Virus record (IMG/VR): IMGVR_UViG_3300042473_001265
Location: 124,001-188,000 of that record
Length of the DNA: 64,000 nucleotides
Reading direction: 5' to 3' (one strand)
Below, piece by piece: positions 11,794 through 52,698 of the stretch. The notes beneath the pieces were generated by a model, which was given only the letters and a program-made list of their open reading frames with translations, was not told the DNA's origin and searched no databases. The position numbers were made by a program, and so were the translations under genes. Position 1 is the first letter of the stretch, and each line of letters begins with the position of its first letter.

Positions 11794-12342
11794 TTAAGAA
11801 AACCGCCAGTAACTTGAAACTCTAATGGTGCCCTCTGGCACTGGATTAAACATGGCATGCCACAGCAGCGGCTGACTGCCGTCAGCAGCCAAGTGATTAA
11901 GCATGATATAGCCCGAATTGGGCCGGCTTAGAAATTGATACAGTAGGTTCTCTGGGTGTTTGTAACGATAAAATCCAGTGCCATATGCCTCGCTGGGCAC
12001 TGTCCAGTACAACTGCATGCTGTTAGGTACATGTCCGTCGGTGTGCATTGCAACATCAAATCCAGGAACATCTATCCAGAAGTGGCCACCCATTGATTTA
12101 AACTCTGTGCCCAGTGCAGTATTAATTTCAGGCAAGCAATGATTGATGTATCTGCTGTAACGCTGAGCAGTGACGTCGTCCCAATTGACTTGCCGACGAG
12201 GCCAAGACTCTTGTCCGCTGCTTAAACTGGTGGACACGGCGGACCAGTCTGTGCTGACTATTTCATCTGCTTGTTCTTGGGGCAGCAAGTCGTCGACTTG
12301 CCAAAGTCTGGCACGATCATCAACTTGTGTAAATTTGGCCAT
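11794..12342 (-). CDS. 2OG-Fe(II) oxygenase-like protein
   Basis: HTD (HxD), distal H (WHAM), RVS (RxS) in DSBH-like spacing. Confidence 0.7.
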   Translation of the reverse strand: MAKFTQVDDRARLWQVDDLLPQEQADEIVSTDWSAVSTSLSSGQESWPRRQVNWDDVTAQRYSRYINHCLPEINTALGTEFKSMGGHFWIDVPGFDVAMHTDGHVPNSMQLYWTVPSEAYGTGFYRYKHPENLLYQFLSRPNSGYIMLNHLAADGSQPLLWHAMFNPVPEGTIRVSSYWRFS

Positions 12343-35200: not shown

Positions 35201-38200
35201 CACATCCCACCCAAATTGTGCTTGATAAATTGGTGCATTGTCTGCTGTTTGATTTAGAGAATCCCAATCAGATGTGATGACAATTTGTTGTACTGTGTTG
35301 AATATGTTGCTTTCAATTTCAATTATGTCGCCCACTGCCAGTGTCACTGCGCTGGTCAACACAACGTCATTGCCGACCACATTGAATCCACCATCAACTG
35401 CAAACTCTGCATTGGTCAAGAACACATTGTTGATCAACACGCTGACCGGCGCTTGCCATCCAGCAGGCAATGCAAATGTGGTTGTGGCTGTTTCGCCTAT
35501 GCCAACTTGATATCGTAATACGCTGCGATCATACACATATGTGCTGCCGGACTCCAGGGAAGAAACCAAACTTGTTGGCGCTCCTATCACTACCTGACGT
35601 CCATCTGTGGCTGACGCCACACTGTGACCAAAATTTACACTGTTGGCAGGGCCGTCAATTTTGTCAATATATTTAAAATATGTTCTAGCAGACGCAAAGA
35701 TAATTGCATCTGCAGGTGGTATGGCAGCAGGTTCAAATGTGACTGTTGTTCCGGCAAATGTATAATCAATGTATGGGCGCTGTGCAAATCCGTTTACTTC
35801 TAACAGGAACGAATCAATATCAGTTGCTGTGTACAAATATTCAGACAGGTCAAACGAGTCGTCGTTGTCGATGCCGGAACCCACAGGTGTAAATGTAACA
35901 ATGCCGCCAACTGTGACTGTGTTGACTGTGATCACCAAGTCATTTGCAGGTGATGTACCACCTCCAATGGTAGCAGCATTAATAGTAAGTGTATCACCAA
36001 TTGCATAGTCCAGGCCCGGAGCAGTTAACGATACTGCATAGTCTCCGCGAGTACGGTCTACAGTAAATGTTGCTTGTGATCCTGATCCTGATGTGGAATC
36101 TTGTGTTACTCCGTAGTAAACTTGATTGTCAAGTTGTATAGACTGGCGTCGAGCAATCACAATCACTGAACCGGCATCAGGTGTAGCTGCAAATAGCACA
36201 GCGGTATTGCTTAAAACATAGTCAACGCCTTCTGATTGTGCGGTGTTGTTAACAACCACTACCAATTGATTGGGATTTGTATAATCAATTTTGACAGCAC
36301 CGGAATATTGGTATTGTTGGTTTATTCCGTCAGCAATGTATGTCACCGACTGTGCAGCAACATCAACTCGACCATAGGCATACACTGCATTTTCGTCCGG
36401 AGCTCCGATGTACACAATTCGTTCATCTTTGCTTATGGCAACACTGGTGCCAAAACTTCCTGCACTGGTATCGTAGTCGGGTGCCACCAACAATTGTGGC
36501 TGTGTAAATCTACTGTCGGATGGATTTCTATTGATAATTGAAGCATACCCAACACCGCTGGCACTAAGGCTTGCGCCTGCTACTGCCCATGTTTGATTAC
36601 CAAATGCAATGTCATTACCAAATCCCAGTGTTTCGGGTGCTGTCAAGTATAATAAATTATCGTCAACATATAGCGCATCTGCTCCTCGTACATACGGATA
36701 TATCACACCGGTAACAGTAGCAGTTGCGTCATTGTAGAATGTAGGTGCGCCTACCAGGGCAGCAAGATTATCATAGGCTTGTGCAACACTTGTGCCATAC
36801 GCAGTATTTTCTATTGGCAAATGCTGCACTAAAGTATGGTTGTCAGTGAACACATCTTGTTTTTCCAGCACTTCCCATAGTTGGGCGCCGTTGTTGTCGA
36901 CCCAGGCCAGTGCACCAGGTACTAGATCATTGGCATAAGATAACAATCCCACGTCACTGGCCTGGGCCACACGCATTGTATCAAGATAAAATGCCAGGCC
37001 GTTGCCGGTGGCAACAATTTGGTTGCCTGTGAATGCATAAGCAACTGTCAAAGTAGTTGGCGTTGGTGCTGTCAACACACGATATACACCGTTGAACGAT
37101 TCATTAAAGAATCGAACAATTAATATATCTCCACGAGTTAAATCGTGTACTGCGGTGAATGTAACTAAACTTGTTCCGTTGAGATTGTCACTTACTCGAG
37201 TAATTCTTCCTGGGGTCTGAGTGGCACGGTACACATTCCAATCATAACTGTTTGTTTTGGCTACCCAAATTCTTGTGCCGTTTCCAATGTTGTCAAGGTC
37301 TGCTGCAATTGAACTTGGATCATCCAAAGAAAACACTGTGATATCAACGTCGTTGATGTTGACATAACCTGCTGTTGGCAATGCTGTGTCTGTAACAGTT
37401 GTGGTTGTTGTAGGTAAAATGTCAGTTGACGGCAACTTATAACTTTCACGCCATACATTATTCAACAACACAGTTTGATTTGCTACACTTGATTCGCCCA
37501 CTTCAATTATTTGTACTGTTGCAGGATCACTTTGCAACAATGCTTCATTCAATTGCAATTCAAAGAAACTGCGGTTGGCATTGGCACCATAGGTGCCGCG
37601 CAGCACTGCCCAATTTTCATAGATTTGATAATCAGCAACTTCTTTGCCAAGATTTGCACCAGTAAATATTTCAGCACTCAGCACAGTACCTTTGGTACCA
37701 ATGAACTGCTTGTACAGATTGACTTGACTGGTATCGTCAAGATTCAATGCAACCATATATTCGCGAGGTTGGAATCCGATCAGTCCATAACTTAATAAAT
37801 CGTTGTCACGCTCCAAGTTGGCTGTTTGTGTGTTGTAACTGTTGGCCAGCTGGTCTGCTTTGTTGGCCAAGTTGGGCAACAGACCTTTTTGTATTTTGGT
37901 ATAGTCGCTCTTGACCCAGTCAGCATAGGCAAATTCTCTTTTGGGCTGAACAATTATCTGTGCAGACCAATAGGTATTTTTATAATTGACAATTTCGCCT
38001 TTGGCATATCGGCGATTTGGAACCCAATCTTGCACATTGTCTTGGTTCAACACAAACCCTTGTGCATTCAATGTGCCGTCCCACTCGGTAGTGGTCATTG
38101 CTATTACATTCACGCGGTTTTGTCTAGCAGAAGTAGTTGGGTTATAAATTAAATCAGCAAAAATACTGACATTGTCTAAAATTACAAGATTTTCATAACT

Positions 38201-41200
38201 GGTGTATCGTAAGTTGGCATAGGCAATTGCCTGGCCAGTGGCACTGGTCACGCTAAATCTATTTTCCAGTCTTTCTATAATTAAATTTCTAGCATCAAAC
38301 GGTTGACGATTTTGATCCAGCATTATATTTTCTATATTCTGCATCATCACATTGTCAATGACTGCGCCGGGTCTTTCTGCAACCAATTGAGTTGCAGCTG
38401 GATTCAAGTTGATTAAACTGTTGACACCCCAACCTTGGTTGGCCCAGTACAGGAACTCTCTGGCCATTTGTTGCCAATCCAGCGGATAACCATTTTCACG
38501 ATCTTCACCAAAAATCAATCCTTGACCAGTTAAGTACTGTCCATAACTCAACAAGAAGTCGACCACCGAACTTTGATTTGTGAATACAAATCCGTATGGC
38601 ACTTGCACAATGTCTGTACTGTATTGTTTTGGCACACGCACAGTGCTGCCACCAGCGCTGACTGTCTGTAGTTGGCCATTGGCACGACTTGCTAGAATAT
38701 TAAAGTATGGATCAACTGTGCTGTATCCAAGCACTGCATATCCAGTGGCAACTGCCTGCACAATAACTGCACTGTATGCAAATGAACTAAATGGCACATT
38801 TTTGTACAACAGCAAATTGTAACTTTCATCCGGCAACAGCAGACTGGAGTTTTGACTGTCTGGACTTGACCGCTCGGTATACACTTTGAGGTATTGTTTG
38901 TCTGTAAAACTGGCAGTTCTCCAGCACAAACGAACATCAAGGCTGGCCAACGCCTGTTCCAACGCATCTGTTGAATTGATGCCCAACTGTTGATTGTAAT
39001 CCACAATCCAGTTGATGTAACTGGCCTTGCTGACAGGAGTAACTGTTCCAGCAACACGGTCAACATGCCCGCCGTACACTTGAACACCATTGGCATCCAG
39101 TCTATAACGACCATTGTATAGATATTGTTCTAAGTCAGCATCGTATTTGTAAAGGTCGCGATCAGCAAATAAACTAAAGAATTTGGCCGGACAGGTTAAT
39201 GCCAACAAACGCATAACAGCAAAAGGATAACTGCTGCTGGTCCACCATGCAGCTTCGGCCGGCCCACCATCGCCAACTACCCAGCTCTTACGGAAAGCAT
39301 TGGGATCGTATGCTCCAACCACACTGTCCAGTGGAGGCAGCAGTGCGCCTTCTGACCCAGTGGGGATAAAGAATGTGGACAAGTTTGGTCGTTGATATTT
39401 TGGAATAATATACGGTGCTACAGGATCAGCCACATAACCCGCTTGAATGTCATCCCATAATACCAAGTTGTCTCCGGTGTAAGGAACCGGTCCATAACGA
39501 TTGGTCCACCACACAGGCTGTTGACTAAATCCCAGCATTTCCCATGGTGTGGTAGATGGACTCAGAGTATCATAAAAATTTCTATAGATTCCGCGCCAGG
39601 CCCCCAACAATGGCAGGTTGAATTGTTTGTCGCCGGCTTGACTGTAGTTGTATGTGAACGCATTGGTGTTGATGTACTGCTGAGTTTTGTAATCAATCTT
39701 GTTCTGGCCACACCAGGTCAAGAAACTTTCGCCAAGTATGGTTGTAATTTCAGCAGCAGTGTAATCTGTTGTTCTGAAGTATCCGGGTATCACATCATCT
39801 GCTACCAATGGAACTGGATTGTCTTGAGTTTTCAAATTGTTAAAAATTCTACGCTCAAATTCCAGCAGTATATCATCACGCAGATCGCCAAATGCAACAG
39901 TAACGCTGCCGTCGTGGCCACGAATAACCACGGTGGGATTGACATAGTTTATATCCAAATACATCTGTGGTTTGTACGCTGCATACAATCCCATCTTGGT
40001 AGGAGTATTGGGAACAAAACTGCCAGTGGTTGTGGCATATTCTCGAACAGTGACTTGATCGCCCACAGCCAATGGCACAGTGACATCAATTCGTGGTCCA
40101 TCTGTGGCCACGGTGTAATCATAATTCAATGTTAACAAATTGCCATTTAGATAAACCAACAATCCTAAAAAGTTAGCAGATGTAAATGTGTATGTCTGAA
40201 CTGTGTCAAATACACCTGAGGTAATTGGTGTCACAGTGTGAATAATCTCTGTGTACACACTGCCGTGTGGTATCATGTCACTGTAGAAAAAACTGTTTAT
40301 ATTAGTTTTACCCAAGCTCAGGTCCGTGATGATTGAATCAAGTATTTGACTGGTGGTGAATGTGCCCCATTCGCTTTGAATGGCTGCTGCTAACATTCTA
40401 TTCTTAAATTTATTGTATTCTCTATCATTGAACTCTAGAGATTTAAAAATATTATAATTTGGCTCTCTCATAAAGAACCCAGCCAGAGTCATTGGAGAAC
40501 TTTGTTGCAGTATGGTTGTGCCATAGCGACCAATGTTGCCCAGGTCTCTGGTGTTGTTAGCTCCGTTGATTTTACCAACAAAGCCAATGAGATTCTCTGC
40601 AATACTTTCGTAATGTGTTCGCACAGTGCCCAGTGTAAACACATCACTGTTGGCGTTGAGTGGATTGTTCTCCAGATTGATGGGAACTTCATAAAAACCT
40701 GTTGCACTAACTTGATCACTCAGCACTTGTACTTCAATCACTGAGCCTGGTACATAGATTTTGTTCAGCGTAATTATAGTTGTGGTTGCATTTATTGTAA
40801 CTGTGTAATCTTGAGGCAACACAAATTCATCAGCCACATAAAGCATAATGGCCGGCACTGTGGTGTTAACTGGCACAACGATATCCAATTGCAACGGTGT
40901 TCCGTTGTAGGTAAATTGGAATTGTTGGCGAATCTGACTCGGAGTCGCTGCAACATCCCACCCAATTTTACGAGTGTATAAAACGCGGTCGCTGTATTGA
41001 TACACAAACCCATCACTGACATTGCCCACTACACCAGAAGTACCAGTTACATAATTGAATGTGTCAGTGTATAAATTATTATCAAACACTATATCACCAA
41101 TGTTGGTAAGACTCAGGTAACGCACAGGAAATCCCAATACAGGGTCTGCTGTTCCATTGCCAATGGCATAGCTGAATAGTTTACTTCCAACAAATGTAGA

Positions 41201-43726
41201 ACTAGGGTATGTTGTTTGATTACTAAAACTCACACCGGCAGAATCAAATACATCAAACAACGGTGCTTGGTTGGTGGCAGTTTTTTCTTGTGCCAGTATC
41301 CAGTCAACACCATCAAAATAGTAACTTAATCCTTGCTGTGTCAATCCGTTTAAGGCAACTACTGTTTGGTTAACCAGCACAGTAGAATCAGCAGCAGGAA
41401 CTAAATTTATTATAGGCTGGTTAATCAAAGGATTAACAGTGTCTGGTTCAATAAATGTTACTTCGTATATTTTATTTCGAACTTGTAAATCTGAATCATT
41501 TGCAAATATAACACGACTGCCATTGATAAATGTGTATCCGTCGGTGCTGTAGCCAATTGTGCCGTTGATGGTGCTGAGTGCATCAGTTGCGTTAAAGTCA
41601 ACAATATCAACTGGTTGTTTGCCTTCGGTGCCAAACTCAAATAATTTAGTACCAGCAATGAATTCTATCACTGGTCGTTTGGCTCTGTAGTTGTTGTCTA
41701 GAACTGCTGTGGTATTATTGTATGCCGCGCTGGCGTTGACAACATCAACATGAAACCAACGATTAGATCGCGACCACGCATTCAGGTCTGGGCTTGCACG
41801 GTTAATTGTCAAATAATCTGGAATCAGTGGAGCATTATCTGTGGCATCATAGTTGCCAATGTCATACCCAACACTGTCAAAAGGAACACTGGAGCTTTGA
41901 GTGTATGTTTCAGGAGTTACAAAACTAGCAACAGCTAACAATTTAATTGCTGTTCCTACTCCTTCAACATAGTATTCTTGGTTTTCGTAACTGGCTGGAA
42001 ATGTGGTTCCGCGGAATTGAACTTTGAGACCATTGGTGAATACTACACCATTGGGACTGGTGTAGGACGGTTGGCCAATGATATCTTCGACGAAGATTGT
42101 ACTGGCTTGGTCTTGATTGATCAAACGAATTTGACCAAATATTTCTGGATCTGTGCCGTCTTGGTAATACAACACATCTTTAATTGCTGTCAGTAACGGA
42201 ATTTGTTCAAATATTCCGTCGGCATTTTTATACCATTCGGTACTGGAATATTGTGTTCCAAACAACACATTAAATTTTTCTAAATTTTCAACTGACAACA
42301 CACTGTTCAACTGCATGTATTGCTGACCACCGGTGGTAGTGATATATTCAATTTGCCATATGCTGTAGCGTTGTGCTTGAGTCAGCGGAGTTGCTTGTGC
42401 AAATGGAATGCTGTCAAAACTGCCGGCGCCGGACTGAACATTGCCCACATTGGGCAACGGATCAAATTGCGAAGTAACTTCCCAGCCGCCTTGATCAGCA
42501 CTGGCATTGTTGACGAATGCAACTGTGCGACCATTTAAATTGGTAATGCCGTCAATGCCGGTGGGATTCTGTGTGAAGAATTCAGCTAAGAACTGATTGT
42601 TGATTTGTTCAAACGTCAGGCTGGTTATTAAATCAACTGATCCAATACTGGGCAATGTGTAATAAAAACTCTGTGCTGTGGCCAGTGGTACATTGAATTG
42701 CACTGCGCCCAAGTCTTCGCCGTTGTTGAATACTCCCAACACATCTCTGCTGCTGATGTTTGGTGCCCAGGGTAGTGTTCCTGAAACACCAGGTGTCATT
42801 TGAATCCAAAATCCTGGACCAGTGCCTGGAGTTCCGTCCACAATGGTAAATGTTCCTTGCATGTTGAACTGCGTTTCGCTGGCATAATATAAATTATCTG
42901 GCGCATCTTGCGGCACAGTAAATGTAATGTTGCCGGTTTGTGACCCGTTGCGACTGACACCTGTGTTGTATTGATTGCCAGTGCCCTGAGTCGGAGCAGT
43001 TTTGATCCAGAACGGCGACGCTGTATCAAGATTTAAATTGAATACATAGGTGTTGCCGCGAACCAGAGTCAATGCAGGATTTGGAACATAATCAATCACA
43101 TACGCAGATATGCCGCTGCTGGTAACGCGGAAATTGACTGATTCTTTTTGATTTTGTGCTACATTAAATGTGTAGTTGCCTCCGCGCACCAGAGTGATTG
43201 AAGGATTATTTGTGGGGTAATTAGAAAAAGTATATACACCATTTTCTCGTGTAACTGTGTAATCAGCCATTAACGGAATAGCAGTGGCACCAACATCCAC
43301 ATTGTCTGGACCAGCTGGCAACCAATAATATTGACTGAAGTTTACAAACTTGTCAAAGTCAAGTTGAGGATTCCAAGTATAGTATTCGCTGGTGTAGAGT
43401 CTATCGCTGTTGTCAGTAAACGATCCTTGTGTGGACAATGCATCACTGATGCCAGGATATGTAATAGCGTCTTCAACTGAGTCGCTATCAGGTTTCAGCA
43501 TGATGACACCCGGCTCCAACTGATAGTTTGTGCGAGTTGCAGTGGGTTCCACTACATAACGATTGTCAGCATTGACTCCGGGTCCAACACGACGACCAAC
43601 AAACCCTTGTGTCTTTTTAAACTGGGGTTCTTGAACCAGTTGGTCCAGAGTAGCAGCTAAAAATTGCTTGTTGGTAGATGTCTGAAATATTTCAGGTAAG
43701 AAATCTACTGTTCTCACTTTTGCCAT
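29279..43726 (-). CDS. Giant (4815 aa) baseplate/tail structural protein with FG-GAP-like propeller repeats and Ig/ubiquitin-like repeats
   Basis: Uninterrupted ORF TAATG-coupled to gp6-like gene; FGxSVA..VxGAP repeats; DYT repeats; VKPYHT motif. Confidence 0.75.
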   Translation of the reverse strand: MAKVRTVDFLPEIFQTSTNKQFLAATLDQLVQEPQFKKTQGFVGRRVGPGVNADNRYVVEPTATRTNYQLEPGVIMLKPDSDSVEDAITYPGISDALSTQGSFTDNSDRLYTSEYYTWNPQLDFDKFVNFSQYYWLPAGPDNVDVGATAIPLMADYTVTRENGVYTFSNYPTNNPSITLVRGGNYTFNVAQNQKESVNFRVTSSGISAYVIDYVPNPALTLVRGNTYVFNLNLDTASPFWIKTAPTQGTGNQYNTGVSRNGSQTGNITFTVPQDAPDNLYYASETQFNMQGTFTIVDGTPGTGPGFWIQMTPGVSGTLPWAPNISSRDVLGVFNNGEDLGAVQFNVPLATAQSFYYTLPSIGSVDLITSLTFEQINNQFLAEFFTQNPTGIDGITNLNGRTVAFVNNASADQGGWEVTSQFDPLPNVGNVQSGAGSFDSIPFAQATPLTQAQRYSIWQIEYITTTGGQQYMQLNSVLSVENLEKFNVLFGTQYSSTEWYKNADGIFEQIPLLTAIKDVLYYQDGTDPEIFGQIRLINQDQASTIFVEDIIGQPSYTSPNGVVFTNGLKVQFRGTTFPASYENQEYYVEGVGTAIKLLAVASFVTPETYTQSSSVPFDSVGYDIGNYDATDNAPLIPDYLTINRASPDLNAWSRSNRWFHVDVVNASAAYNNTTAVLDNNYRAKRPVIEFIAGTKLFEFGTEGKQPVDIVDFNATDALSTINGTIGYSTDGYTFINGSRVIFANDSDLQVRNKIYEVTFIEPDTVNPLINQPIINLVPAADSTVLVNQTVVALNGLTQQGLSYYFDGVDWILAQEKTATNQAPLFDVFDSAGVSFSNQTTYPSSTFVGSKLFSYAIGNGTADPVLGFPVRYLSLTNIGDIVFDNNLYTDTFNYVTGTSGVVGNVSDGFVYQYSDRVLYTRKIGWDVAATPSQIRQQFQFTYNGTPLQLDIVVPVNTTVPAIMLYVADEFVLPQDYTVTINATTTIITLNKIYVPGSVIEVQVLSDQVSATGFYEVPINLENNPLNANSDVFTLGTVRTHYESIAENLIGFVGKINGANNTRDLGNIGRYGTTILQQSSPMTLAGFFMREPNYNIFKSLEFNDREYNKFKNRMLAAAIQSEWGTFTTSQILDSIITDLSLGKTNINSFFYSDMIPHGSVYTEIIHTVTPITSGVFDTVQTYTFTSANFLGLLVYLNGNLLTLNYDYTVATDGPRIDVTVPLAVGDQVTVREYATTTGSFVPNTPTKMGLYAAYKPQMYLDINYVNPTVVIRGHDGSVTVAFGDLRDDILLEFERRIFNNLKTQDNPVPLVADDVIPGYFRTTDYTAAEITTILGESFLTWCGQNKIDYKTQQYINTNAFTYNYSQAGDKQFNLPLLGAWRGIYRNFYDTLSPSTTPWEMLGFSQQPVWWTNRYGPVPYTGDNLVLWDDIQAGYVADPVAPYIIPKYQRPNLSTFFIPTGSEGALLPPLDSVVGAYDPNAFRKSWVVGDGGPAEAAWWTSSSYPFAVMRLLALTCPAKFFSLFADRDLYKYDADLEQYLYNGRYRLDANGVQVYGGHVDRVAGTVTPVSKASYINWIVDYNQQLGINSTDALEQALASLDVRLCWRTASFTDKQYLKVYTERSSPDSQNSSLLLPDESYNLLLYKNVPFSSFAYSAVIVQAVATGYAVLGYSTVDPYFNILASRANGQLQTVSAGGSTVRVPKQYSTDIVQVPYGFVFTNQSSVVDFLLSYGQYLTGQGLIFGEDRENGYPLDWQQMAREFLYWANQGWGVNSLINLNPAATQLVAERPGAVIDNVMMQNIENIMLDQNRQPFDARNLIIERLENRFSVTSATGQAIAYANLRYTSYENLVILDNVSIFADLIYNPTTSARQNRVNVIAMTTTEWDGTLNAQGFVLNQDNVQDWVPNRRYAKGEIVNYKNTYWSAQIIVQPKREFAYADWVKSDYTKIQKGLLPNLANKADQLANSYNTQTANLERDNDLLSYGLIGFQPREYMVALNLDDTSQVNLYKQFIGTKGTVLSAEIFTGANLGKEVADYQIYENWAVLRGTYGANANRSFFELQLNEALLQSDPATVQIIEVGESSVANQTVLLNNVWRESYKLPSTDILPTTTTTVTDTALPTAGYVNINDVDITVFSLDDPSSIAADLDNIGNGTRIWVAKTNSYDWNVYRATQTPGRITRVSDNLNGTSLVTFTAVHDLTRGDILIVRFFNESFNGVYRVLTAPTPTTLTVAYAFTGNQIVATGNGLAFYLDTMRVAQASDVGLLSYANDLVPGALAWVDNNGAQLWEVLEKQDVFTDNHTLVQHLPIENTAYGTSVAQAYDNLAALVGAPTFYNDATATVTGVIYPYVRGADALYVDDNLLYLTAPETLGFGNDIAFGNQTWAVAGASLSASGVGYASIINRNPSDSRFTQPQLLVAPDYDTSAGSFGTSVAISKDERIVYIGAPDENAVYAYGRVDVAAQSVTYIADGINQQYQYSGAVKIDYTNPNQLVVVVNNTAQSEGVDYVLSNTAVLFAATPDAGSVIVIARRQSIQLDNQVYYGVTQDSTSGSGSQATFTVDRTRGDYAVSLTAPGLDYAIGDTLTINAATIGGGTSPANDLVITVNTVTVGGIVTFTPVGSGIDNDDSFDLSEYLYTATDIDSFLLEVNGFAQRPYIDYTFAGTTVTFEPAAIPPADAIIFASARTYFKYIDKIDGPANSVNFGHSVASATDGRQVVIGAPTSLVSSLESGSTYVYDRSVLRYQVGIGETATTTFALPAGWQAPVSVLINNVFLTNAEFAVDGGFNVVGNDVVLTSAVTLAVGDIIEIESNIFNTVQQIVITSDWDSLNQTADNAPIYQAQFGWDVDLCPNNCSIYIGAPQNTNNDSGAVQRNVNQARVYGIISSPVANPVLTAGNTVRVNDYQVAVPAAPNNTVAGLAAAINSANNGIGIPNATATVSDDLYFVADGIVKTFDIGVTYSQFDSYNTVVYLGTTLQTLNVDYTYNNTKGTIAFITAPADKTVIRVVTGVLTLSVINAAAATSNAKLNVLPGLTGSAFTDIGFVNYPYTQTITSPNPSQFARFGSSLFIDSTALTLVVGAPNGNMYKPVTFDNNTTYFDDRSTVFSTTIVQSGVAYTFDYLPSSTDSVNNPGKFVFGQQLYNDATKELDGYGTGLSYITGKLLVGAPGNDLEDSQFANFGQVVVFDNPDRTPAWTVKHLQTPVVDVALLNSVYMYDKLESQVTSYLDFFDPLQGKILGIAQENIDYVGAVDPANYNNGPIRNVGNPWAGARVGQIWWDTNSVRFIDPNQDDIVYASRRWGQTFPGSRIDIYQWVESEVQPANYTGPGTPLSFLSYTTRAELNSENVFATRYYFWVRNISTVNTVAGKKLSTTAIANYIQFPRASGIAYLAPLNASTVAIYNVLDLISAQDTILHVEYDRLANDDNVHQEYELIAADRADSFLSGNLYLKLQDSFSGINITGASVPDPGLSPAMRYGVEFRPRQSMFADRFGALQNYLGRANTVLAQYPITETKSFTLLNSREPEPAANSGAWNKRVANLSELGYQNLIIVPLGYRYLVATDTNNSGFWTIYEVVSGSAPGSRELTLIRVQNYDTRRYWSYIDWYLPGYNKTVNPVTSVLNYSGLSGVTLKIAPVGASVEVTNAATTGKFEIYQRTDLGWDRVGLEDGTIEFSRSLWDYAAGNFGFDVEVFDSQYFDQEPVIETRKIIQAINEQLFIDELLIERNRALILTFEYVMSEFASPDWLIKTSLIDVDHKIRNLLPYQFYNRDNQDFVLNYIQEVKPYHTQIREFNLSYNGNDAYPGLMTDFDLPAFWDATLTVPQFISPVLLPYTQSTANSNTNFNADTAADSTLWAKTPWDEWYANYTLSIQAVVITNGGVGYTVAPSITVTGDCVEQAEMTAIINGAGQVSGITIDNYGSGYTTTAIITFVGGNGTGAAAAVTMGNDLIRQITTRIKYDRYEYSSTIVEWQAGVNYDNGTQVRYLNRVWEAAADDSTGIQSNTFDPADWVIVNPGLLSGVDRTMGFYTPTVNEPGLSLPLLIDGVEYPGVQMFGVGYDQYPGFDIAPFDTTPFDNLTYGPEGRPTYDQTILDAIYQSPYNDPYLGTLATSINADGGAYIDTYSSHAPEELVPGSEFDTLDLRVYTTPGADWARDGHGFRIEVKKYTVTAVPETFDFASVDPVPATLLVENQTTGLLMHPVTDYTVDWVAQTVTVINGVDVDDVIVISLFEIGGGNQLLKRPYNGDEVTPEPIGSSLVVPVQYSLIDEFVIFVNGSLITNYTYIQAGTSTKLLFSNLYTSADYLMIAAIGPTTIDDTEINYSWSVPVTQYIAGISNQYLYTLTNSMEYTNPDNVYVTIDGRRVRTAAGAQYYADGTSEYLLPQRLGFDQSIIADNEVRVYVDDIPQILNIDFIVEPYDPDTPRAVIFDVTPTDGEKILICVTTDAQAVVTGDQILFNQYGGFVPTDGQIIAVTSWNDTRQQDILTQVYVGPGARVTPDGTEPFDSTDFDVGTVVGAPGSFDYSPPQQVSLNNLFLDHLNTDPDRLFVTLNGVLLFNNVSYTLVNDEIVLAGGYILSPTDVVMITQFTNSIAPLAMAFRIFQDMRGVQATYRITTATTTYLTQALSADADTIYVYNAAALDEPNLANNIWGLLTVNGERIMYRNRNLVTNTVSGLRRGTAGTGAASHAVNADVYNIGRGNLLQPEYQNYIVSNITNPLISGVNIGDGVTTSFVAALIDVSSEDSTVYNEAIEVYIGGTLQLGGYTVTNENPVTVLFDTAPAAGSEVTILVRRGVTWYAPGAGTPSNGVALQDTNTVAARFLRGE

Positions 43727-47199: not shown

Positions 47200-47574
47200 T
47201 TATGCGTAACTGGCACTGGCGGTTTGTTGATCAAAGTACACGCTTAAAAATTCAGTTGTTTGTCCCGGTACCATCGTCACTTGCAGCTCAACCAATATGC
47301 CGTTTTCTTGCGGAAACATAGCAGCTGACTGTATAAAAATTCTTGGATCTAAACTGGCCACACGCTGTATTTCTGCCAGTATGGCTCGTTCAGTGTCTTG
47401 TGTTTGATTTTCAAATATGTAACTGTATATCAAGGTGCCATAACCTGGACGACCTGGCAGTTGTCCTTGCTGTATATTAAGAGCATTCAGCAGATCGCGC
47501 TTGACCAATTCAAAATCTACCAATGTAAATTTCTTGGTTTGTCCTATTGTGTTGAATCCTACAAATGTTGTCAT
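47200..47574 (-). CDS. Baseplate wedge protein (T4 gp25-like)
   Basis: LVKRDLLNAL..GQLPGRPGYGT..IFE..DPRI; TAAATA 4 nt upstream (47579-47584). Confidence 0.85.
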   Translation of the reverse strand: MTTFVGFNTIGQTKKFTLVDFELVKRDLLNALNIQQGQLPGRPGYGTLIYSYIFENQTQDTERAILAEIQRVASLDPRIFIQSAAMFPQENGILVELQVTMVPGQTTEFLSVYFDQQTASASYA

Positions 47575-47589
47575 ATTGTATTTACTCAG

Positions 47590-48945
47590 TTAGGCTGTCT
47601 GTATTGGAGGCAGTCCCAATCGTTGTCTAATAATTGGGTCGTCACCGGTGTAAGGAGGTGCGTTGGGATCTCCCAAAGAGTTAACAAAAGAGTTGGCATT
47701 TGCGTTGAGTCCAGCAAGGCCACCTGGTATGTTTCCGTTAAGTGCAGCTTTTGCTTGCAGGGCGGCAGCTTCTAATGAAGCAATATCAACGGCCTGTGGA
47801 CTAAAAAGCTGCGCCGGTATTTTACTGCTACCAACCAGTTTACTCACTGCTGAATTCAATGTTGCTCTGTCCACTGTGCCTTTGAATCCAGCTGCTGGAA
47901 TAACACCTGCCACTGCGGCCGGCAATTTGAAATCACTAAAATTAACAGCAAACTGTCCTTGTTTGGCCAACGAATCCATTTGTGGTTTTAATGCTTCTGC
48001 TTTTGCGGCAAAGTCGGCACCGGCACTTTTTAGACTTCCTAAATTGCCAATGGCACCGGTGATGCCGCCGGATTTTGAAAAGCCGCTGACTGAACTTTCG
48101 AAGCCGCTGGCAATGCCTTTGAGGCTACTGGCAACACCTTCCACACTGTTTACATCTAATCCTGTTGAACTGGCTGAACTTTCAATTCCTTTGGCCCAGG
48201 CCGTGGCAGTGCCCACGCCAAATTTGCTAGAATTTGCCAGCAGGCCGCCAAGGTCTGCTATTCCTTTGTTGGATGCAAGGGCAGCACTGGCGCCGCCCAA
48301 TGCATCTGCCCCTGCTTGGGTTATTGCAGGCAGTCCCAGTCGAGCTCTGACAATCGGATCATCGCCGGTGTAGGGCGGTGCGTTGGGATCATTTAATGCA
48401 TTGACTGCCGAATTAATGCTTGCACTGAGTCCGGCAGCACCACCTTTTAAACTGCTGCCAAAACTGCTGCCAATACTGCTGCCAATATTGCCAACACCGT
48501 CGAGGCCGCCGCTCACTGCTGATTTTAAACTGCCGGCCAGTCCGGACAATTTAGATTCCAACGAGGATAATGAATTTTCTAACCCACTGGTGGATAGTTT
48601 ACTCAGCACATCTGGTGCCTTGACCAGCCCAGCAGATGCTGATATTAAATTTTTGCCAAAATTAGCAGCAGCATCATACAGTTGTCCAACTGGTGGAGTT
48701 AAATTAACACCGGGTGTTTTGATTTGACCAGTTTCGACCAATGTATCAAAACTGGATTTCATAAGCCCAAATTGAATTTTATCTTGCAGTGCTGGATTTG
48801 ACAGCAGCGCATTTACTCCAGTAACACCATCTTTGCCGGTCCATACACTGGGACTGTTCAACACACTGATGAAATTGCTTGGGTTGGGTATACCCGTAAA
48901 GGCCGGTAAGTTAGGTAATCCAGGAATATTTGGTAAAGTAGCCAT
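47590..48945 (-). CDS. Tail/baseplate-associated protein (WTGKDG lysozyme-like half-domain plus Gly/Ser/Ala-rich region)
   Basis: Start moved to TAATG-coupled ATG 48945; two PYTGDDP modules. Confidence 0.65.
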   Translation of the reverse strand: MATLPNIPGLPNLPAFTGIPNPSNFISVLNSPSVWTGKDGVTGVNALLSNPALQDKIQFGLMKSSFDTLVETGQIKTPGVNLTPPVGQLYDAAANFGKNLISASAGLVKAPDVLSKLSTSGLENSLSSLESKLSGLAGSLKSAVSGGLDGVGNIGSSIGSSFGSSLKGGAAGLSASINSAVNALNDPNAPPYTGDDPIVRARLGLPAITQAGADALGGASAALASNKGIADLGGLLANSSKFGVGTATAWAKGIESSASSTGLDVNSVEGVASSLKGIASGFESSVSGFSKSGGITGAIGNLGSLKSAGADFAAKAEALKPQMDSLAKQGQFAVNFSDFKLPAAVAGVIPAAGFKGTVDRATLNSAVSKLVGSSKIPAQLFSPQAVDIASLEAAALQAKAALNGNIPGGLAGLNANANSFVNSLGDPNAPPYTGDDPIIRQRLGLPPIQTA

Positions 48946-49472
48946 TATGGTCCTTGTAAAAATCTTGCGCATGTGCCAGGTTTTAGTAACCCGGCTGCTT
49001 CCAACTGATCGCAATTGAACCCGTACTTGCCGCACCCCAGTTCGTTTGTGATAACATCGGCTGGTTGACACACACATGCAGCAATTGCTGCCATAATTGC
49101 TTGAACATTAGTCGGAGTCAATGGGCCTATTGACGCAGTCACCACTGATGTGTCCACATAATCAGACACTGTAATGCCATTGTTGATTGGCACATCTCTC
49201 AATGCAGGCAACGACGAAACCACTGCTTCTCCGTAAATGGCCAGCAACGGAACATCTGGAACGCCGGCTGTTCCTCTGTCAAGGCGTGACAGAGAAAATT
49301 GAACACCAGTTGTGGTCGGCGACTGCAATGTGTCACCAGATTTTAAACCAACAAATGTGCCAGCGGCCAACTGTTCAAGATAAACTCGTTCAGCTTCAAT
49401 TGCAGTGGTTCCAGCAGGAGCTTCTAATGTGAATAACAATCCATTGGGAAGATTAAAACTAAATTTAGCCAT
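48945..49472 (-). CDS. Tail/baseplate-associated protein ending in GKYGF..LEAAGLLKPG (first half of a lysozyme-like domain)
   Basis: ORF track 175 aa; follows gp5-like gene. Confidence 0.65.
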   Translation of the reverse strand: MAKFSFNLPNGLLFTLEAPAGTTAIEAERVYLEQLAAGTFVGLKSGDTLQSPTTTGVQFSLSRLDRGTAGVPDVPLLAIYGEAVVSSLPALRDVPINNGITVSDYVDTSVVTASIGPLTPTNVQAIMAAIAACVCQPADVITNELGCGKYGFNCDQLEAAGLLKPGTCARFLQGP

Positions 49473-49473
49473 G

Positions 49474-50988
49474 TTATGATACTGTTCCTGTAAATCCTGC
49501 AGGCAGTGGCGGAGTATTTGGCGGAGTGGTTGGTTGCCCAGGTTCCATTGGTACTTCTACGCTGACGCCTTGATTGTGAAACGGCCACGGTTCGTGCGTG
49601 GGTGCTCTGGTCACAATGCTTTCTAATCCCGAAGAAGAAATTTGCCAACCAGTGGCGTTGTTGAATTCTGTTTCAGGCATTACATATTTTTCCAACTTCT
49701 TGGGTGCATCTACATTTTCTGCAGATCCGCCATTGAGATCAATGCCGCCGGCTTGCAATGTCATGGCAGACCCAGCGTTCCATGATCCGTTGTTGCTGGC
49801 CAGTGCTAGACTGCCGTCGGCTTTGACAGCAATGCGAGCTTTGCTGTACAGAACGGTTTCTTCTGTGCTGTAAAATGTCAATTTCTTTTCAGATTCTACA
49901 GTTGTGCCTTCCATACTTTTCATATTGATACGAGCACCGGCAAACATGTTGATGTCTTTGTCTGCGTGAAAATTAATTGTTCCTTGTGTGCGAACATTAA
50001 CCGAGTTGGTAGCATACACATCCAGTGTGCCTTCTTGTCCCATTTCTAACCAAGTTTGTCCATTGGCATGAATGATGTATAAGAAGTTGCCGTCGTCACT
50101 CATTGTGATCTGATGACCGCCGGCTGTGCGAACACGCACAAGATTGTCTTTGTTGTTGAGATTGCCGTCATCCATCACAATGCTGTGGCCGCCACGACGG
50201 CCAATCACATTTACATCTGTGGCATTGATAGTTCTAGCAGCGATGCGTTGTTGTATATCAACTTCTGAAAATCCACCTTGGTACACTGGCCGCCCTGGCG
50301 TACTGATACCAAACACAGCACTGGGACTTTCTCGCTGGCTGGTTGAACTGATGGGGCCGCGCATTGGATCAGCCAGTGTGCCTTGCTGAAACATTTCAGC
50401 TGCTATAAAGCTGTGTACAGGTTTTGGTTGATTAAAGAATTGCGGATTATTGTCTATCTTTGAATTGTTTGGATTGATTTCTGTCACCGGCAATACAGTT
50501 GCGCCCAGGTAGTAGCTTTGTTGATCACTGTTTTGTAAATCAAAATTTGCACTGGACCCAATGGCCGGAATCATATGCGTCATGCCTTGATCTGGAATAC
50601 ATCCCATGTAATAGCCCAAGTTTGGGTCGCCGCCGGCAAAGAAACACAACACACTTACTCCAAGATCTGGAGGCGTGAACCACATGCCATAACTTTGCGG
50701 ATTCCCGTCCAGGTATCCTCCTACCGAGTTAGTATCACCTTTTTTACCAGCCTGTGGTGGTGTTGCTCCATAGAACGGAGATGCATAACTCACAGTGCGC
50801 CACAGCGACTTATTTGATGGATCGGACCCGGCAAACTGCTCAATATAAACTTGTAACCGACCTTGTCTGGTTGGATCAACATTGTTTTTTACCACGCCGA
50901 CAAACGGACCAAAGTCCGCTTTCATTCCGCCACGGTCGTATTTGTAATTGGGTGCTACGCCACTGTTTCTTTGTATATTTTCAGACAT
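49474..50988 (-). CDS. Baseplate central spike (T4 gp5/VgrG-like; OB-fold plus beta-helix, no lysozyme domain)
   Basis: DPTRQGRLQV, SYGMWFTPPD, RTAGGHQITMSD, beta-helix repeats, C-terminal RAPTHEPWPFH. Confidence 0.8.
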   Translation of the reverse strand: MSENIQRNSGVAPNYKYDRGGMKADFGPFVGVVKNNVDPTRQGRLQVYIEQFAGSDPSNKSLWRTVSYASPFYGATPPQAGKKGDTNSVGGYLDGNPQSYGMWFTPPDLGVSVLCFFAGGDPNLGYYMGCIPDQGMTHMIPAIGSSANFDLQNSDQQSYYLGATVLPVTEINPNNSKIDNNPQFFNQPKPVHSFIAAEMFQQGTLADPMRGPISSTSQRESPSAVFGISTPGRPVYQGGFSEVDIQQRIAARTINATDVNVIGRRGGHSIVMDDGNLNNKDNLVRVRTAGGHQITMSDDGNFLYIIHANGQTWLEMGQEGTLDVYATNSVNVRTQGTINFHADKDINMFAGARINMKSMEGTTVESEKKLTFYSTEETVLYSKARIAVKADGSLALASNNGSWNAGSAMTLQAGGIDLNGGSAENVDAPKKLEKYVMPETEFNNATGWQISSSGLESIVTRAPTHEPWPFHNQGVSVEVPMEPGQPTTPPNTPPLPAGFTGTVS

Positions 50989-50997
50989 GTGTTATCC

Positions 50998-52698
50998 TTA
51001 GGTATCTCTAACTATCAGTTGCGTTGCACCCGGAGTGGCCGGCAACGGTGGGAGTCCCAGTCGTTGTCTAACAATTGGATCATCGCCGGTGTAAGGTGGT
51101 GCATTTGGGTCCTGTAGTGATTTAACAAAAGAATCGGCATTTGATGCAATGCCCCCCAGAGTCAATGTTGGTGGCAACGTGACTGCTGGTGCCAACAGTT
51201 GTTGACCTCCTAATTCAGTTGTGAGCAATGCTTGAGCTGATTCAATGCCCGGTGTGGCCAATGATTCAGTTGGTGCTGCTAGTAGTGCTTGATTTTTTCT
51301 TGCTAGGTCCGCATTGGTAAGTTCTTGAGTTGCTGGTACTGCTCGATCTTGACGGGCAAAATCTCCAGCGGATAGGCTACCTGATGCTGGCGCTTTGGTT
51401 CTTGGATCAGTAATTTGAAATAATTTGCCCCGAAGGTCTTGTTCAAATTTGCCTTTGCTAAATTTGTTAGTACATTCAGTGGCTGTGTAGGTGTAGGTCT
51501 GAGATGCCTGAGCTGTGTTGGGAGTTTTGTTAGGACTTGCCAGGCCGGTACCGTTGACATCGTAATCTGCCACAGTGTTCCATTGCAGATCAAAAATAAT
51601 TTCTTGGGCGTCAAAATTGATTCCACCGTCGGGATTAAATGGGTTGAAATTGAATTCCAGTGACTTAACACCAGTGGCTGCTTCGCCTTGTTGTAACCAA
51701 GCTGGATCTCCAATGATGTTGAGATTTACCGTGGCAATGTCAGTTGGACTGTACAAATAATCAGCTGCACTTGCACCAATGCTGTTGGTTATTCCATCGG
51801 CACCTTGACTACTACTGCCGGCAACTGCTGCTTGATATTCAATTGCAGGAGCTTCTCGGGCCAGTTGATTGGTCAAGGCCTTGGTGTTGGTTGCAATTGT
51901 AGAATTGCTAAAGGTCAATTTATATGCAGAATTGAATTGCTGCTCATATCGTATCACCTGTGTGTTCTGTCCAGTAAACCAATACTTGTAACTTTTGTGT
52001 ATTCCACGCAGAGTGCCGGCTGGAAAATACTCGCTCATCATGCTGCTTATACCATATGCGCTGATGGTATATGTTATATTATACGCAAAATCTCTTCTTT
52101 TTTTGTCATACTGCAACGGCGAAGTGGTTACTGAAATTTTATACCACCCAAGATCGCCCAATGGTTTCTGTGGCTTGGTTTGTTGACTAACTTCGTCAAC
52201 CATCCAGGCCGCTTGATCTGTGATGTAACTGCTGTTTTTTAATATTTCGTCAAGAATTGCAACAATTGGAGTGCCAGCAGCAAAGTCAAAAGTTCTAACA
52301 TCGTATGATACAGAATTGGTAGCAGGATTGAGAGCATCAGCCTGATTGACACTTTGTTGCATGGGAACTTTGGCTTTGTTGGGTTTGCCACCTTTGGTAA
52401 CTTTTGCATCACCCAGTGCTGGCGGTGCAAATTCAATTTTGTATACATTGGCCACTTCCCATACACCATCAGCAACCAATTTTTGTTCGGCTGCATTTAA
52501 TGAATCTACTAAGCCGACTGCTGCTATTTTACTTTTTTTAATAGCTACTGCATTGGCCTTAGGTGGTGGTGTTGCTACGGGTGGTGGTGGTGTTGCTACG
52601 GCTGCTCGCGCTGCTGCACCCTTGGCCAACATAGCTGCGTCGGCTGCACGCATTCGAGCTATTATGCCCGGTCGTTTGGCGAAAAAGTCAGTGGCCAT
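50998..52698 (-). CDS. Baseplate hub/tail protein, C-terminal part (gp27-like)
   Basis: KSYKYWFTGQN, LNIIGDPAWL, FSKGKFEQDL; AGGAG RBS; one PYTGDDP module. Confidence 0.6.
   Translation of the reverse strand: MATDFFAKRPGIIARMRAADAAMLAKGAAARAAVATPPPPVATPPPKANAVAIKKSKIAAVGLVDSLNAAEQKLVADGVWEVANVYKIEFAPPALGDAKVTKGGKPNKAKVPMQQSVNQADALNPATNSVSYDVRTFDFAAGTPIVAILDEILKNSSYITDQAAWMVDEVSQQTKPQKPLGDLGWYKISVTTSPLQYDKKRRDFAYNITYTISAYGISSMMSEYFPAGTLRGIHKSYKYWFTGQNTQVIRYEQQFNSAYKLTFSNSTIATNTKALTNQLAREAPAIEYQAAVAGSSSQGADGITNSIGASAADYLYSPTDIATVNLNIIGDPAWLQQGEAATGVKSLEFNFNPFNPDGGINFDAQEIIFDLQWNTVADYDVNGTGLASPNKTPNTAQASQTYTYTATECTNKFSKGKFEQDLRGKLFQITDPRTKAPASGSLSAGDFARQDRAVPATQELTNADLARKNQALLAAPTESLATPGIESAQALLTTELGGQQLLAPAVTLPPTLTLGGIASNADSFVKSLQDPNAPPYTGDDPIVRQRLGLPPLPATPGATQLIVRDT
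52562..52601. repeat. 21-bp tandem duplication (VATPPPP VATPPP)
   Basis: ggtggtggtgttgctacgg twice in tandem. Confidence 0.8.

What the first reader, a model, noticed from the sequence alone, without database searches (positions are those of the whole stretch)
48860..49077. A lysozyme-like domain appears split across two ORFs at a TAATG junction; possible -1 frameshift
Seen: ORF 48945-49472 ends ..CGKYGFNCDQLEAAGLLKPGTCARFLQGP* and the next begins MATLPNIPG..LNSPSVWTGKDGVTGVNALLSNPALQ. From recall, GKY..L...G..K...WTGKDG....L.NP..Q is one contiguous phage lysozyme-like motif. The downstream (-1) frame stays open for at least 44 codons before its ATG. A-TTT-TTA sits just before the stop, along with an AAGGA SD. 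Inference: gene fission with translational coupling, or programmed -1 slippage giving both short and fused products.
Basis: partly seen in the sequence, partly recalled or inferred. Interest (0 to 1): 0.6.

Follow-up and report, generated by a model that had tools for sequence, protein, structure and literature searches.

The report
Split lysozyme-like domain, two coupled genes
In this 340-kb lake phage, one compact lysozyme-like domain of the tail baseplate is encoded as two neighbouring genes that overlap at TAATG, whereas most relatives make it as a single protein; the split looks like an ordinary gene fission with coupled translation, not a programmed frameshift.

Summary
Gene A (48945-49472, minus strand, 175 aa) ends in TAA, which overlaps the ATG of gene B (47590-48945, 451 aa) as TAATG. 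B lies in the -1 frame.

The end of A and the start of B are the two halves of one conserved domain:
- At least 136 of the 150 best representative relatives are single 400-700 aa proteins that match across the junction in one stretch.
- Four lineages among the near relatives are also fused.
- A natural fused relative folds with pLDDT 95-98 over residues 100-230, and the split point (about residue 172) lies inside that domain.
- The eight best solved-structure matches are all lytic transglycosylases or lysozymes (Z 5.2-7.0).
- No sequence profile places the domain in the SLT family, and no conserved catalytic acid was found.

The split sits in a loop of variable length. Every split relative keeps an ATG for B and a GGA/GGAGG Shine-Dalgarno-like site next to A's stop. 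One lineage has B in the +1 frame and another has lost the T-run. A-TTT-TTA is not a canonical slippery heptamer, and no RNA structure follows it. Independent lake assemblies show the same junction.

Verdict: gene fission with translational coupling. The two chains probably reassemble (complex score 0.62, best control 0.00). A -1 frameshift is unlikely but not excluded.

The parts
48945..49472 (-). Gene A, 175 aa. It has a small N-terminal beta-beta-alpha domain, a variable linker, and then the N-terminal half (about residues 100-172) of the lysozyme-like domain.
   Evidence: ORF. 146 homologs of 168-290 aa. Alignments A1 and A5. Model of a fused relative.
47590..48945 (-). Gene B, 451 aa. It has a Pro-rich N-terminal linker (residues 1-20), the C-terminal half of the lysozyme-like domain (about residues 21-80), and then a long Ala/Gly/Ser-rich part with conserved blocks.
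   Evidence: ORF. 208 homologs. Collinear with the second part of fused relatives. Weak tape-measure PHROG hits on the rest of the protein.
48943..48947 (-). TAATG: A's TAA stop overlaps B's ATG by one base, so B is in the -1 frame.
   Evidence: The same or an equivalent overlap (TGATG, ATGA, or TAA + 5-8 nt + ATG) is seen in all split relatives.
48951..48955 (-). AAGGA, a Shine-Dalgarno-like site 5 nt before B's ATG, lying inside A's last codons.
   Evidence: GGA or GGAGG lies 5-9 nt before the ATG in nearly all split relatives. The codon GGA is used 16/16 at that Gly column although GGA is only 22-25% of Gly codons.
48957..48965 (-). It is a U-rich tract always 11 nt before B's ATG in the -1 split forms.
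   Evidence: Synonymous identity is 0.79-0.88 over A's last 7 codons against 0.52 for the whole gene. The tract is absent in L016, L045-50 and all fused forms.
48957..49175 (-). N-terminal half of the lysozyme-like domain (A residues about 100-172): a long helix, a small beta sheet carrying G-x-G-K-Y-G, and two short helices.
   Evidence: pLDDT 95-98 in the fused model. Near-invariant Q136, G146, G148, G151, Q156, L157, E158, G161, K164, P165. Interface residues 107-173.
48706..48885 (-). C-terminal half of the lysozyme-like domain (B residues about 21-80): NPSNFISVL-SPSVWTGKDG...LQDKIQFGLMKSS...G.
   Evidence: Conserved P32, W35, T36, G37, L48, Q54, G73. Interface residues 20-66. phrog_27932 hit on B residues 21-77.
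48886..48945 (-). B residues 1-20 (MATLPNIPGLPNLPAFTGIP): a Pro-rich insert at the split point that the fused forms and most split forms lack.
   Evidence: Alignments. The linker at this position varies from 6 to 25 aa in the wider family.
49474..50988 (-). The upstream gene, a gp5/VgrG-like baseplate hub (504 aa) without a lysozyme domain of its own.
   Evidence: phrog_13211 at 4e-38, plus weak Phage_base_V and DUF2345. In other phages the A-B module sits inside the hub polypeptide.
47200..47574 (-). The downstream gene, a gp25/W-like baseplate wedge protein (124 aa). It fixes the context as a baseplate operon.
   Evidence: phrog_43 at 7e-10, GPW_gp25 at 1.4e-5. The synteny hub -> A(/B) -> 124 aa -> large wedge protein is conserved in relatives.

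Best explanation
Genes A and B result from a gene fission inside a single lysozyme-like domain of a baseplate protein encoded just after the gp5-like hub gene. The ancestral and still prevalent form is one protein of 400-700 aa. In the window's clade, a stop and a start arose in a surface loop of variable length, between the lobe with the long helix and beta sheet (now the C-terminal part of A) and the helical lobe (now the N-terminal part of B).

The two genes are translated separately. Ribosomes terminate at A's TAA and start B at the overlapping ATG, helped by the AAGGA and the U-rich tract inside A's last codons (translational coupling). This would give roughly equimolar chains. The two chains then reassemble non-covalently into the same domain as in the fused relatives.

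Shown here: the contiguity in homologs, the fold, the position of the split, and the conservation of the start and Shine-Dalgarno-like site. Inferred: the coupling itself, the reassembly, and any cell-wall-binding or cell-wall-cutting role. The domain may be non-catalytic, because no conserved catalytic acid was found.
For: Fused relatives:
- Four lineages near the window are fused: L009/10/13/14, L022-24, L051/52 and L055.
- In the exhaustive profile search, at least 136 of the 150 best cluster representatives are 400-700 aa proteins with one matched stretch over profile positions 1 to about 245.
- Fused proteins match phrog_27932 in one stretch across the junction, E 8e-8 to 8e-10.

One domain:
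- The AF2 model of fused L013 on a 109-row alignment has pLDDT 95-98 for residues 100-230, with the split at about 172 between two short helices.
- The linker at that point varies from 6 to 25 aa in the family.

Lysozyme-like fold:
- The VIA wide search gives Slt70 Z 7.0 (rmsd 3.3 A, 89 aligned), MltE 6.7, Pseudomonas Slt 6.6, MltC 6.5, phiKZ gp144 6.3, EtgA 5.8, DslA 5.7 and Bombyx lysozyme 5.2. All cover model residues 100-233.
- BFVD and Atlas matches are gp5/Vgr hub proteins and 'Baseplate hub + tail lysozyme'.

Separate initiation:
- All split relatives have an ATG at or within 8 nt of A's stop, and GGA or GGAGG 5-9 nt upstream.
- Synonymous sites in A's last 7 codons are the most conserved in the gene, 0.79-0.88 against 0.52.
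- The fused form L055, nested among split forms, has lost both the T-run and the GGA.
- TAATG junctions also occur at 12342 and 43726.

Reassembly:
- Complex prediction of A with B residues 1-95 scored 0.62 (runs 0.62, 0.42, 0.71) against a best control of 0.00. That mark was reached by 58 of 80 solved complexes and 2 of 110 mismatched pairs.
- Contacts agreed in at least 53% between runs, and partner pLDDT was at least 53.
- The interface is A 107-173 with B 20-66, and conserved residues touch (A G148, K149 and Y150 with B Q54; A 161-164 with B 34-36).

Not an artefact:
- Identical junctions appear in four IMG/VR contigs.
- A 2191-nt contig of an independent lake run covers 48407-50000 with 0 differences. 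Contigs of another run cross the junction without gaps.
Against: - No protein-level data exist, so neither separate chains nor a fused product has been observed.
- The alignments for the complex prediction were cut from fused homologs. The pass therefore mainly restates that the halves form one domain, and the tool's calibration holds only roughly for user alignments.
- The structural Z scores (5-7) lie in the range the tool calls 'middling'. The fold call rests on the top hits all belonging to one superfamily.
- The nucleotide-level conservation of AGA TTT TTA GGA fits a ribosome-binding region but would also fit a slip site.
- The constant 11-nt spacing from the T-run to the ATG is unexplained, except as shared descent.
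Confidence: 0.75

Rival explanations
1. Programmed -1 ribosomal frameshifting at A-TTT-TTA yields a fused A-B protein in addition to A (and B), as in phage tail chaperone G/GT.
For: - B is in the -1 frame in all but one split lineage, and the -1 frame is open from ATT TTT to the ATG.
- AGA TTT TTA is conserved at synonymous sites, although AGA is only 21% of Arg codons and TTA 15% of Leu codons in this genome.
- The T-run lies 11 nt before the ATG in every -1 form, and in L017 the 0-frame stop follows it directly.
- A shifted product would have a linker of similar length to natural fused forms.
Against: - It is not an X XXY YYZ heptamer. After the shift, the P-site Phe tRNA would face AUU and the Leu tRNA would face UUU.
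- L016 has B in the +1 frame with a 14-nt overlap, GGAGG and no T-run. L045-50 read TTT CTA and keep the split.
- The 116 nt after the site fold no better than shuffles (-14.2 kcal/mol, z +1.77).
- B always has its own ATG and Shine-Dalgarno-like site, unlike the T part of G/GT.
- The homology between fused forms and A continues in the 0 frame up to A's stop (RFIRNP against RFLQGP).
Confidence: 0.1
2. A and B are separate proteins that no longer work together. B's N-terminal segment and A's C-terminal segment are remnants, and each has a role of its own.
For: - A has an extra N-terminal domain, and B has a long C-terminal part with its own conserved blocks.
- The window's B has a 20-aa Pro-rich insert at the junction.
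Against: - The residues conserved in fused forms are kept in both halves of split forms: G148, K149, Y150, K164 and P165 in A, and W35, T36, G37, Q54 and G73 in B.
- These residues contact each other in the predicted complex (score 0.62 against 0.00).
- The state has flipped between fused and split several times, which is hard to reconcile with diverged functions.
Confidence: 0.1
3. The split is a sequencing or assembly indel, or a recent inactivating mutation (pseudogene).
For: A run of five T is a place where indels arise. One fused relative (L055) comes from a short contig whose 3' part reads out of frame.
Against: - The junction is identical in 4 IMG/VR contigs and in contigs of independent lake runs, with no indel at the junction.
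- Dozens of diverged split relatives (59-97% identity), from lakes and from Tara ocean samples, keep both genes intact with amino-acid conservation.
Confidence: 0.02

Closest known systems
T4 gp5-type 'baseplate hub subunit and tail lysozyme' (phrog_27932; for example Agrobacterium phage Atu_ph04, 853 aa)
   Same: It belongs to the same baseplate operon context. Fused relatives match phrog_27932 across the junction (E down to 8e-10). BFVD hub proteins carry the whole A-B module (E 9e-7 and 2e-3). A lysozyme-like domain is associated with the cell-puncturing hub.
   Different: Here the module is not part of the hub polypeptide. The hub (504 aa) is a separate upstream gene, and the module is further cut into two genes inside the domain. 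T4 gp5 is cleaved after translation between the lysozyme domain and the beta-helix, not inside the lysozyme domain (from general knowledge).
Family-1 lytic transglycosylases / SLT domain (Slt70, MltE, MltC, phiKZ gp144, EtgA)
   Same: These are the best structural matches over the whole domain, Z 5.8-7.0, rmsd 3.0-4.3 A, 79-96 residues aligned. The order of elements is the same: a long helix, a small sheet, then a helical lobe.
   Different: There is no sequence-profile relation. Pfam SLT is absent from 109 members. hhalign against four E. coli SLT domains gives probability 0.6%. No E-S, GLMQ or AYNAG motifs are present. Where the matched ranges would place the catalytic Glu (about residues 128-136), no acid is conserved, and Gln136 occurs in 105 of 109 rows.
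Translationally coupled overlapping genes (TAATG / ATGA junctions) in phage structural operons
   Same: There is a one-base stop/start overlap, a Shine-Dalgarno-like site inside the upstream gene, and the same junction type at 12342 and 43726 in this window.
   Different: The boundary here cuts through a single folded domain rather than lying between two proteins.
Phage tail assembly chaperone G/GT -1 programmed frameshift
   Same: The downstream reading frame is -1, a U-rich run precedes the upstream stop, and the setting is a tail operon.
   Different: There is no canonical heptamer, no stimulatory structure, the downstream gene has its own conserved start, and some split relatives lack the T-run or use the +1 frame.

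Membership tests
Lysozyme-like fold (GH23/SLT-type lytic transglycosylases) | Three-dimensional fold: a helix ending at the active site, a small beta sheet, and a helical C-lobe | tested here: met
   The model has pLDDT 95-98 over residues 100-230. The eight best of 48,161 chains are all lytic transglycosylases or lysozymes, Z 5.2-7.0, covering model residues 100-233. The Z scores are middling by the tool's own note. Foldseek against the PDB found nothing.
Lysozyme-like fold (GH23/SLT-type lytic transglycosylases) | Sequence-profile membership (Pfam SLT PF01464 or another lysozyme family) | tested here: not met
   No Pfam family among 109 members. No PDB sequence hit. PF01464 was not found in the phage genome. 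hhalign against Slt70, MltE, MltC and MltD domains gives probability 0.6%.
Lysozyme-like fold (GH23/SLT-type lytic transglycosylases) | Conserved catalytic Glu at the C-terminal end of the first long helix | tested here: inconclusive
   The column census shows no conserved acid at residues 120-140. Gln136 occurs in 105/109 rows. The only near-invariant acid is Glu158, in 99/109. The equivalence was estimated from alignment ranges only, because no residue-level superposition was available.
Lysozyme-like fold (GH23/SLT-type lytic transglycosylases) | Cleavage of peptidoglycan | not testable with these tools
   This needs a zymogram or turbidity assay of the fused relative and of co-expressed A and B.
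Programmed -1 ribosomal frameshift site | Slippery heptamer X XXY YYZ in the upstream frame | tested here: not met
   The site reads A TTT TTA (AGA TTT TTA, 48965-48957). The first three letters are not identical, and re-pairing after the shift would be mismatched for both tRNAs.
Programmed -1 ribosomal frameshift site | The site and the -1 relation are conserved in all relatives with the split | tested here: not met
   L016 has B in the +1 frame and no T-run. L045-50 read TTT CTA.
Programmed -1 ribosomal frameshift site | A stimulatory RNA structure (or internal SD at the right distance) downstream or upstream of the site | tested here: not met
   The 116 nt from the site fold at -14.2 kcal/mol, and 195 of 200 shuffles fold at least as well. 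The AAGGA lies downstream of the site, not upstream.
Programmed -1 ribosomal frameshift site | A fused trans-frame protein is made | not testable with these tools
   This needs proteomics or a reporter assay. The RNA contigs do not bridge the junction.
Translationally coupled gene pair | Stop of the upstream gene overlapping or within a few nt of the downstream start, with a Shine-Dalgarno-like site just upstream | tested here: met
   TAATG is preceded by AAGGA 5 nt before the ATG. TAATG, TGATG, ATGA, or TAA + 5-8 nt + ATG, with GGA or GGAGG, is found in all split relatives.
Translationally coupled gene pair | Translation of the downstream gene depends on translation of the upstream gene | not testable with these tools
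   This needs a premature-stop or reporter experiment.
gp5-type baseplate hub + tail lysozyme (phrog_27932) | HMM match to the family | tested here: met
   Fused relatives match at E 8e-8 to 8e-10 over profile positions 323-447 of 855. The window's B alone matches at E 0.003, and A alone does not match.
gp5-type baseplate hub + tail lysozyme (phrog_27932) | OB-fold hub and lysozyme-like module in one polypeptide | tested here: not met
   The hub is the separate gene 49474-50988. A and B carry no OB or beta-helix part.

The most novel reading that the evidence does not exclude
The conserved AGA-UUU-UUA-N11-AUG arrangement is a dual-use element. Most ribosomes terminate and restart, giving A and B. 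A fraction slip -1 on the U-run, giving a covalently fused A-B chain. The phage would then set a fixed ratio of split to fused lysozyme-like modules in its baseplate. This would be a non-canonical slip site serving a naturally split enzyme-like fold that has toggled between fused and split states several times.
Probability: 0.08. Interest if true: 0.7.

Novelty: new variant of a known kind. Interest (0 to 1): 0.4.

Why it matters
It is a clean natural case of a single small domain (about 130 residues, lysozyme-like fold) encoded as two polypeptides, with many fused relatives available for comparison and at least 2-4 switches between the fused and split states. That makes it a ready-made system for studying how a fold tolerates fission at a loop, and how stop/start overlaps keep the two halves in balance.

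It also adds a step to a series of architectures for the tail 'lysozyme' of contractile phages: inside the hub protein, then a separate protein after the hub, then two half-proteins. The family has no Pfam model. It may be a non-catalytic, cell-wall-binding version of the fold.

For annotation, it warns that the 175-aa and 451-aa 'hypothetical proteins' of these lake and marine jumbo phages should be read together.

Tried and rejected
- tblastn of A and of B against 50,697 phage records found no match.
- Pfam on A, B and 109 family members found nothing meaningful. PHROGs found nothing for A alone.
- Profile searches of PDB sequences with A3 and A4 gave only a chance hit, glutamate dehydrogenase at E 0.59.
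- The ESM Atlas search by features on A gave scores of 0.78 or less, which is noise.
- The first AF2 run on a 47-row alignment gave pLDDT 43 and was unusable. It was replaced by the 109-row run.
- Foldseek against the PDB gave no hit with E <= 0.001; MltE appeared only at E of about 5.
- hhalign of the domain against an alignment of the E. coli Slt70, MltE, MltC and MltD domains was not significant, so it could not fix the catalytic position.
- PF01464 was absent from the phage's own genome.
- Two literature searches found nothing on such a split.
- The long open -1 frame upstream of B's ATG was rejected as a signal, because it is not conserved.
- RNA contigs from two lake metatranscriptomes touch A and B of related strains but do not bridge the junction. 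They say nothing on slippage.
- No other genetic code was tried or needed.
Full report
**What is there.** The window is part of a 340,172-bp virus record (44.6% G+C, estimated 98% complete) found in lake-water metagenomes. The finding lies in a minus-strand baseplate operon, in this order:
- a 101-aa wedge protein;
- two 'virion structural' proteins (481 aa and 566 aa);
- a gp5/VgrG-like hub (49474-50988, 504 aa; phrog_13211 at 4e-38);
- gene A (48945-49472, 175 aa);
- gene B (47590-48945, 451 aa);
- a gp25/W-like protein (47200-47574);
- an 1137-aa wedge protein;
- a 4815-aa ORF.

A ends ...ARFLQGP-TAA. The last A of the stop is the first base of B's ATG (TAATG, 48947-48943), so B is in the -1 frame. 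AGA TTT TTA (48965-48957) and AAGGA (48955-48951) precede it.

**Is it an artefact?** No. Four IMG/VR contigs from other samples carry the identical junction (L001-L004). A 2191-nt contig of an independent lake run covers 48407-50000 with no difference. Contigs of another run cross the junction without gaps, one of them from a strain with 22 substitutions. Only contigs, not raw reads, were available.

**Are the two ORFs one domain?** Yes.
- A has 146 homologs and B has 208 homologs in the word search, all called as separate proteins. That search sees only proteins of similar length.
- Among 55 fetched loci, four lineages have one ORF: L009/10/13/14 (449 aa), L022-24 (491 aa), L051/52 (465-486 aa, the deepest branch) and L055. 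They are collinear with A followed by B.
- Family scans left both proteins open, and the claim turns on whether fused kin exist. I therefore ran the exhaustive profile search, which gave 645 relatives. At least 136 of the 150 best cluster representatives are 400-700 aa proteins with a single matched stretch over profile positions 1 to about 245, that is, across the junction at about 172.
- Fused proteins match phrog_27932 ('baseplate hub subunit and tail lysozyme') in one stretch across the junction (E 8e-8 to 8e-10). The window's B alone matches only weakly (E 0.003), and A alone does not match.
- So the fused form is the rule, and the window's clade is a derived split form. On a tree of the A part, the fused or split label needs four changes, and well-supported branches force at least two.

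**Where does the cut fall?**
- With a 47-row alignment AF2 failed (pLDDT 43). With a 109-row alignment of fused relatives, the natural fused protein of L013 folds with mean pLDDT 82.8, and 95-98 over residues 100-230.
- The cut (about residue 172) lies between two short helices of this compact domain. At this point the family's linker varies from 6 to 25 residues.
- The window's B adds a 20-aa Pro-rich stretch there.

**Is it lysozyme-like?** In fold, probably yes.
- An all-against-representatives structural search puts only lytic transglycosylases and lysozymes in the first eight places, all over model residues 100-233: Slt70 Z 7.0 (rmsd 3.3 A, 89 aligned), MltE 6.7, Pseudomonas Slt 6.6, MltC 6.5, phiKZ gp144 6.3, EtgA 5.8, DslA 5.7 and Bombyx lysozyme 5.2. 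Rpf, phage lambda lysozyme, phi6 and phi29 enzymes rank lower.
- The tool warns that Z below 8 can be a common arrangement. The case rests on all the top hits belonging to one superfamily. It is backed by BFVD and Atlas hits to gp5/Vgr hub proteins and to 'Baseplate hub + tail lysozyme' of Agrobacterium phage Atu_ph04.
- In sequence there is no support: no Pfam family in 109 members, no PDB sequence hit, and hhalign against four E. coli SLT domains gives probability 0.6%.
- No acidic residue is conserved where the matched ranges would place the catalytic Glu. Gln136 occurs in 105 of 109 rows, and the only near-invariant acid is Glu158.
- The domain may therefore bind rather than cut the cell wall. 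This is an inference from ranges, not from a residue-level superposition.

**Frameshift or two genes?**
- Every split relative has an ATG for B at or next to A's stop: TAATG, TGATG, ATGA, or TAA followed by 5-8 nt and ATG. GGA or GGAGG lies 5-9 nt upstream.
- L016 has B in the +1 frame with a 14-nt overlap, GGAGG and no T-run. L045-50 read TTT CTA. A conserved -1 slip cannot explain these.
- A TTT TTA is not an X XXY YYZ heptamer.
- The 116 nt that follow fold worse than 195 of 200 shuffles.
- TAATG is used at two other gene boundaries in the window.
- The long open -1 frame upstream of B's ATG shrinks to 4-7 codons in most relatives.

**Points in favour of some nucleotide-level function.**
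- A's last seven codons have the highest synonymous identity in the gene, 0.79-0.88 against 0.52 overall.
- They use codons that are not preferred in this genome: AGA 21% of Arg, TTA 15% of Leu, GGA 22% of Gly.
- The T-run sits 11 nt before the ATG in every -1 form, even though A's stop moves.
- L055, a fused form nested among split ones, has lost both the T-run and the GGA.
- These facts fit a ribosome-binding region for B (a U-rich tract plus a Shine-Dalgarno-like site) and do not require slippage. They do leave a small room for it.

**Do the halves reassemble?**
- The residues conserved in fused forms are kept in both halves of split forms.
- Complex prediction for A with B(1-95) gave a score of 0.62 (runs 0.62, 0.42, 0.71), with a best control of 0.00. 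That mark was reached by 58 of 80 solved complexes and 2 of 110 mismatched pairs. Contacts agreed in at least 53% between runs, and partner pLDDT was at least 53.
- The interface is A 107-173 with B 20-66. A's G148, K149 and Y150 touch B's Q54, and A 161-164 touch B 34-36.
- My alignments were cut from fused homologs, so this mostly restates the single-domain model. It supports binding and does not show it.

**Verdict.** The best reading is a gene fission inside a lysozyme-like baseplate domain, with translational coupling and non-covalent reassembly (confidence about 0.75). A programmed -1 frameshift is unlikely (about 0.1). An artefact or pseudogene is effectively excluded.

It is a new variant of a known kind of module: the tail lysozyme associated with the gp5-like hub, here detached from the hub and cut in two. 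Interest is moderate. No step had to be referred.

Noticed in passing
window 47658, 48378 and 51099 (minus strand): A 20-residue motif, DPNAPPYTGDDPI[VI]R[QA]RLGLP, occurs only three times in the 340-kb genome: in the middle and at the C-terminus of gene B, and at the C-terminus of the 566-aa protein 50998-52698. It also ends the fused relatives of L009 and L022 but is absent in L051/52. It could be a shared docking or processing signal of tail-interior proteins.
   Followed up: partly
window 29279-43726 (minus strand): A 4815-aa ORF starts at a TAATG overlap with the 1137-aa baseplate wedge gene. The only Pfam hit is FG-GAP repeats in its third quarter.
   Followed up: partly
window 12342 and 43726: Two further TAATG stop/start overlaps between neighbouring minus-strand genes show that this junction type is routine in the genome.
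   Followed up: yes
window 49474-50988, and BFVD entries A0A6J5L6V6 and A0A223VZY5: The gp5-like hub here has OB and DUF2345 parts only. In other phages (an uncultured phage protein of 742 aa, and the Agrobacterium phage Atu_ph04 'Baseplate hub + tail lysozyme' of 853 aa) the A-B module sits inside the hub protein. This suggests a series: hub with module, then a separate module, then a split module.
   Followed up: partly
window 49031-49035: A related strain in run X22 carries an inserted T behind 49031 and a 1-nt deletion at 49035 inside gene A. This compensating pair recodes one or two codons.
   Followed up: no
window 48945-48965 and loci L001-L054: In every -1 split form the U-run ends exactly 11 nt before B's ATG, although A's stop codon sits at four different positions in that interval. 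This is unexplained beyond shared descent.
   Followed up: partly
L055 (JGI contig, 1162 bp), 182-1054: This fused form is nested inside a split clade. A net 2-nt loss at the ATGA junction joined A to codon 2 of B. The 3' part of the ORF reads out of frame, so the contig may be of low quality.
   Followed up: partly
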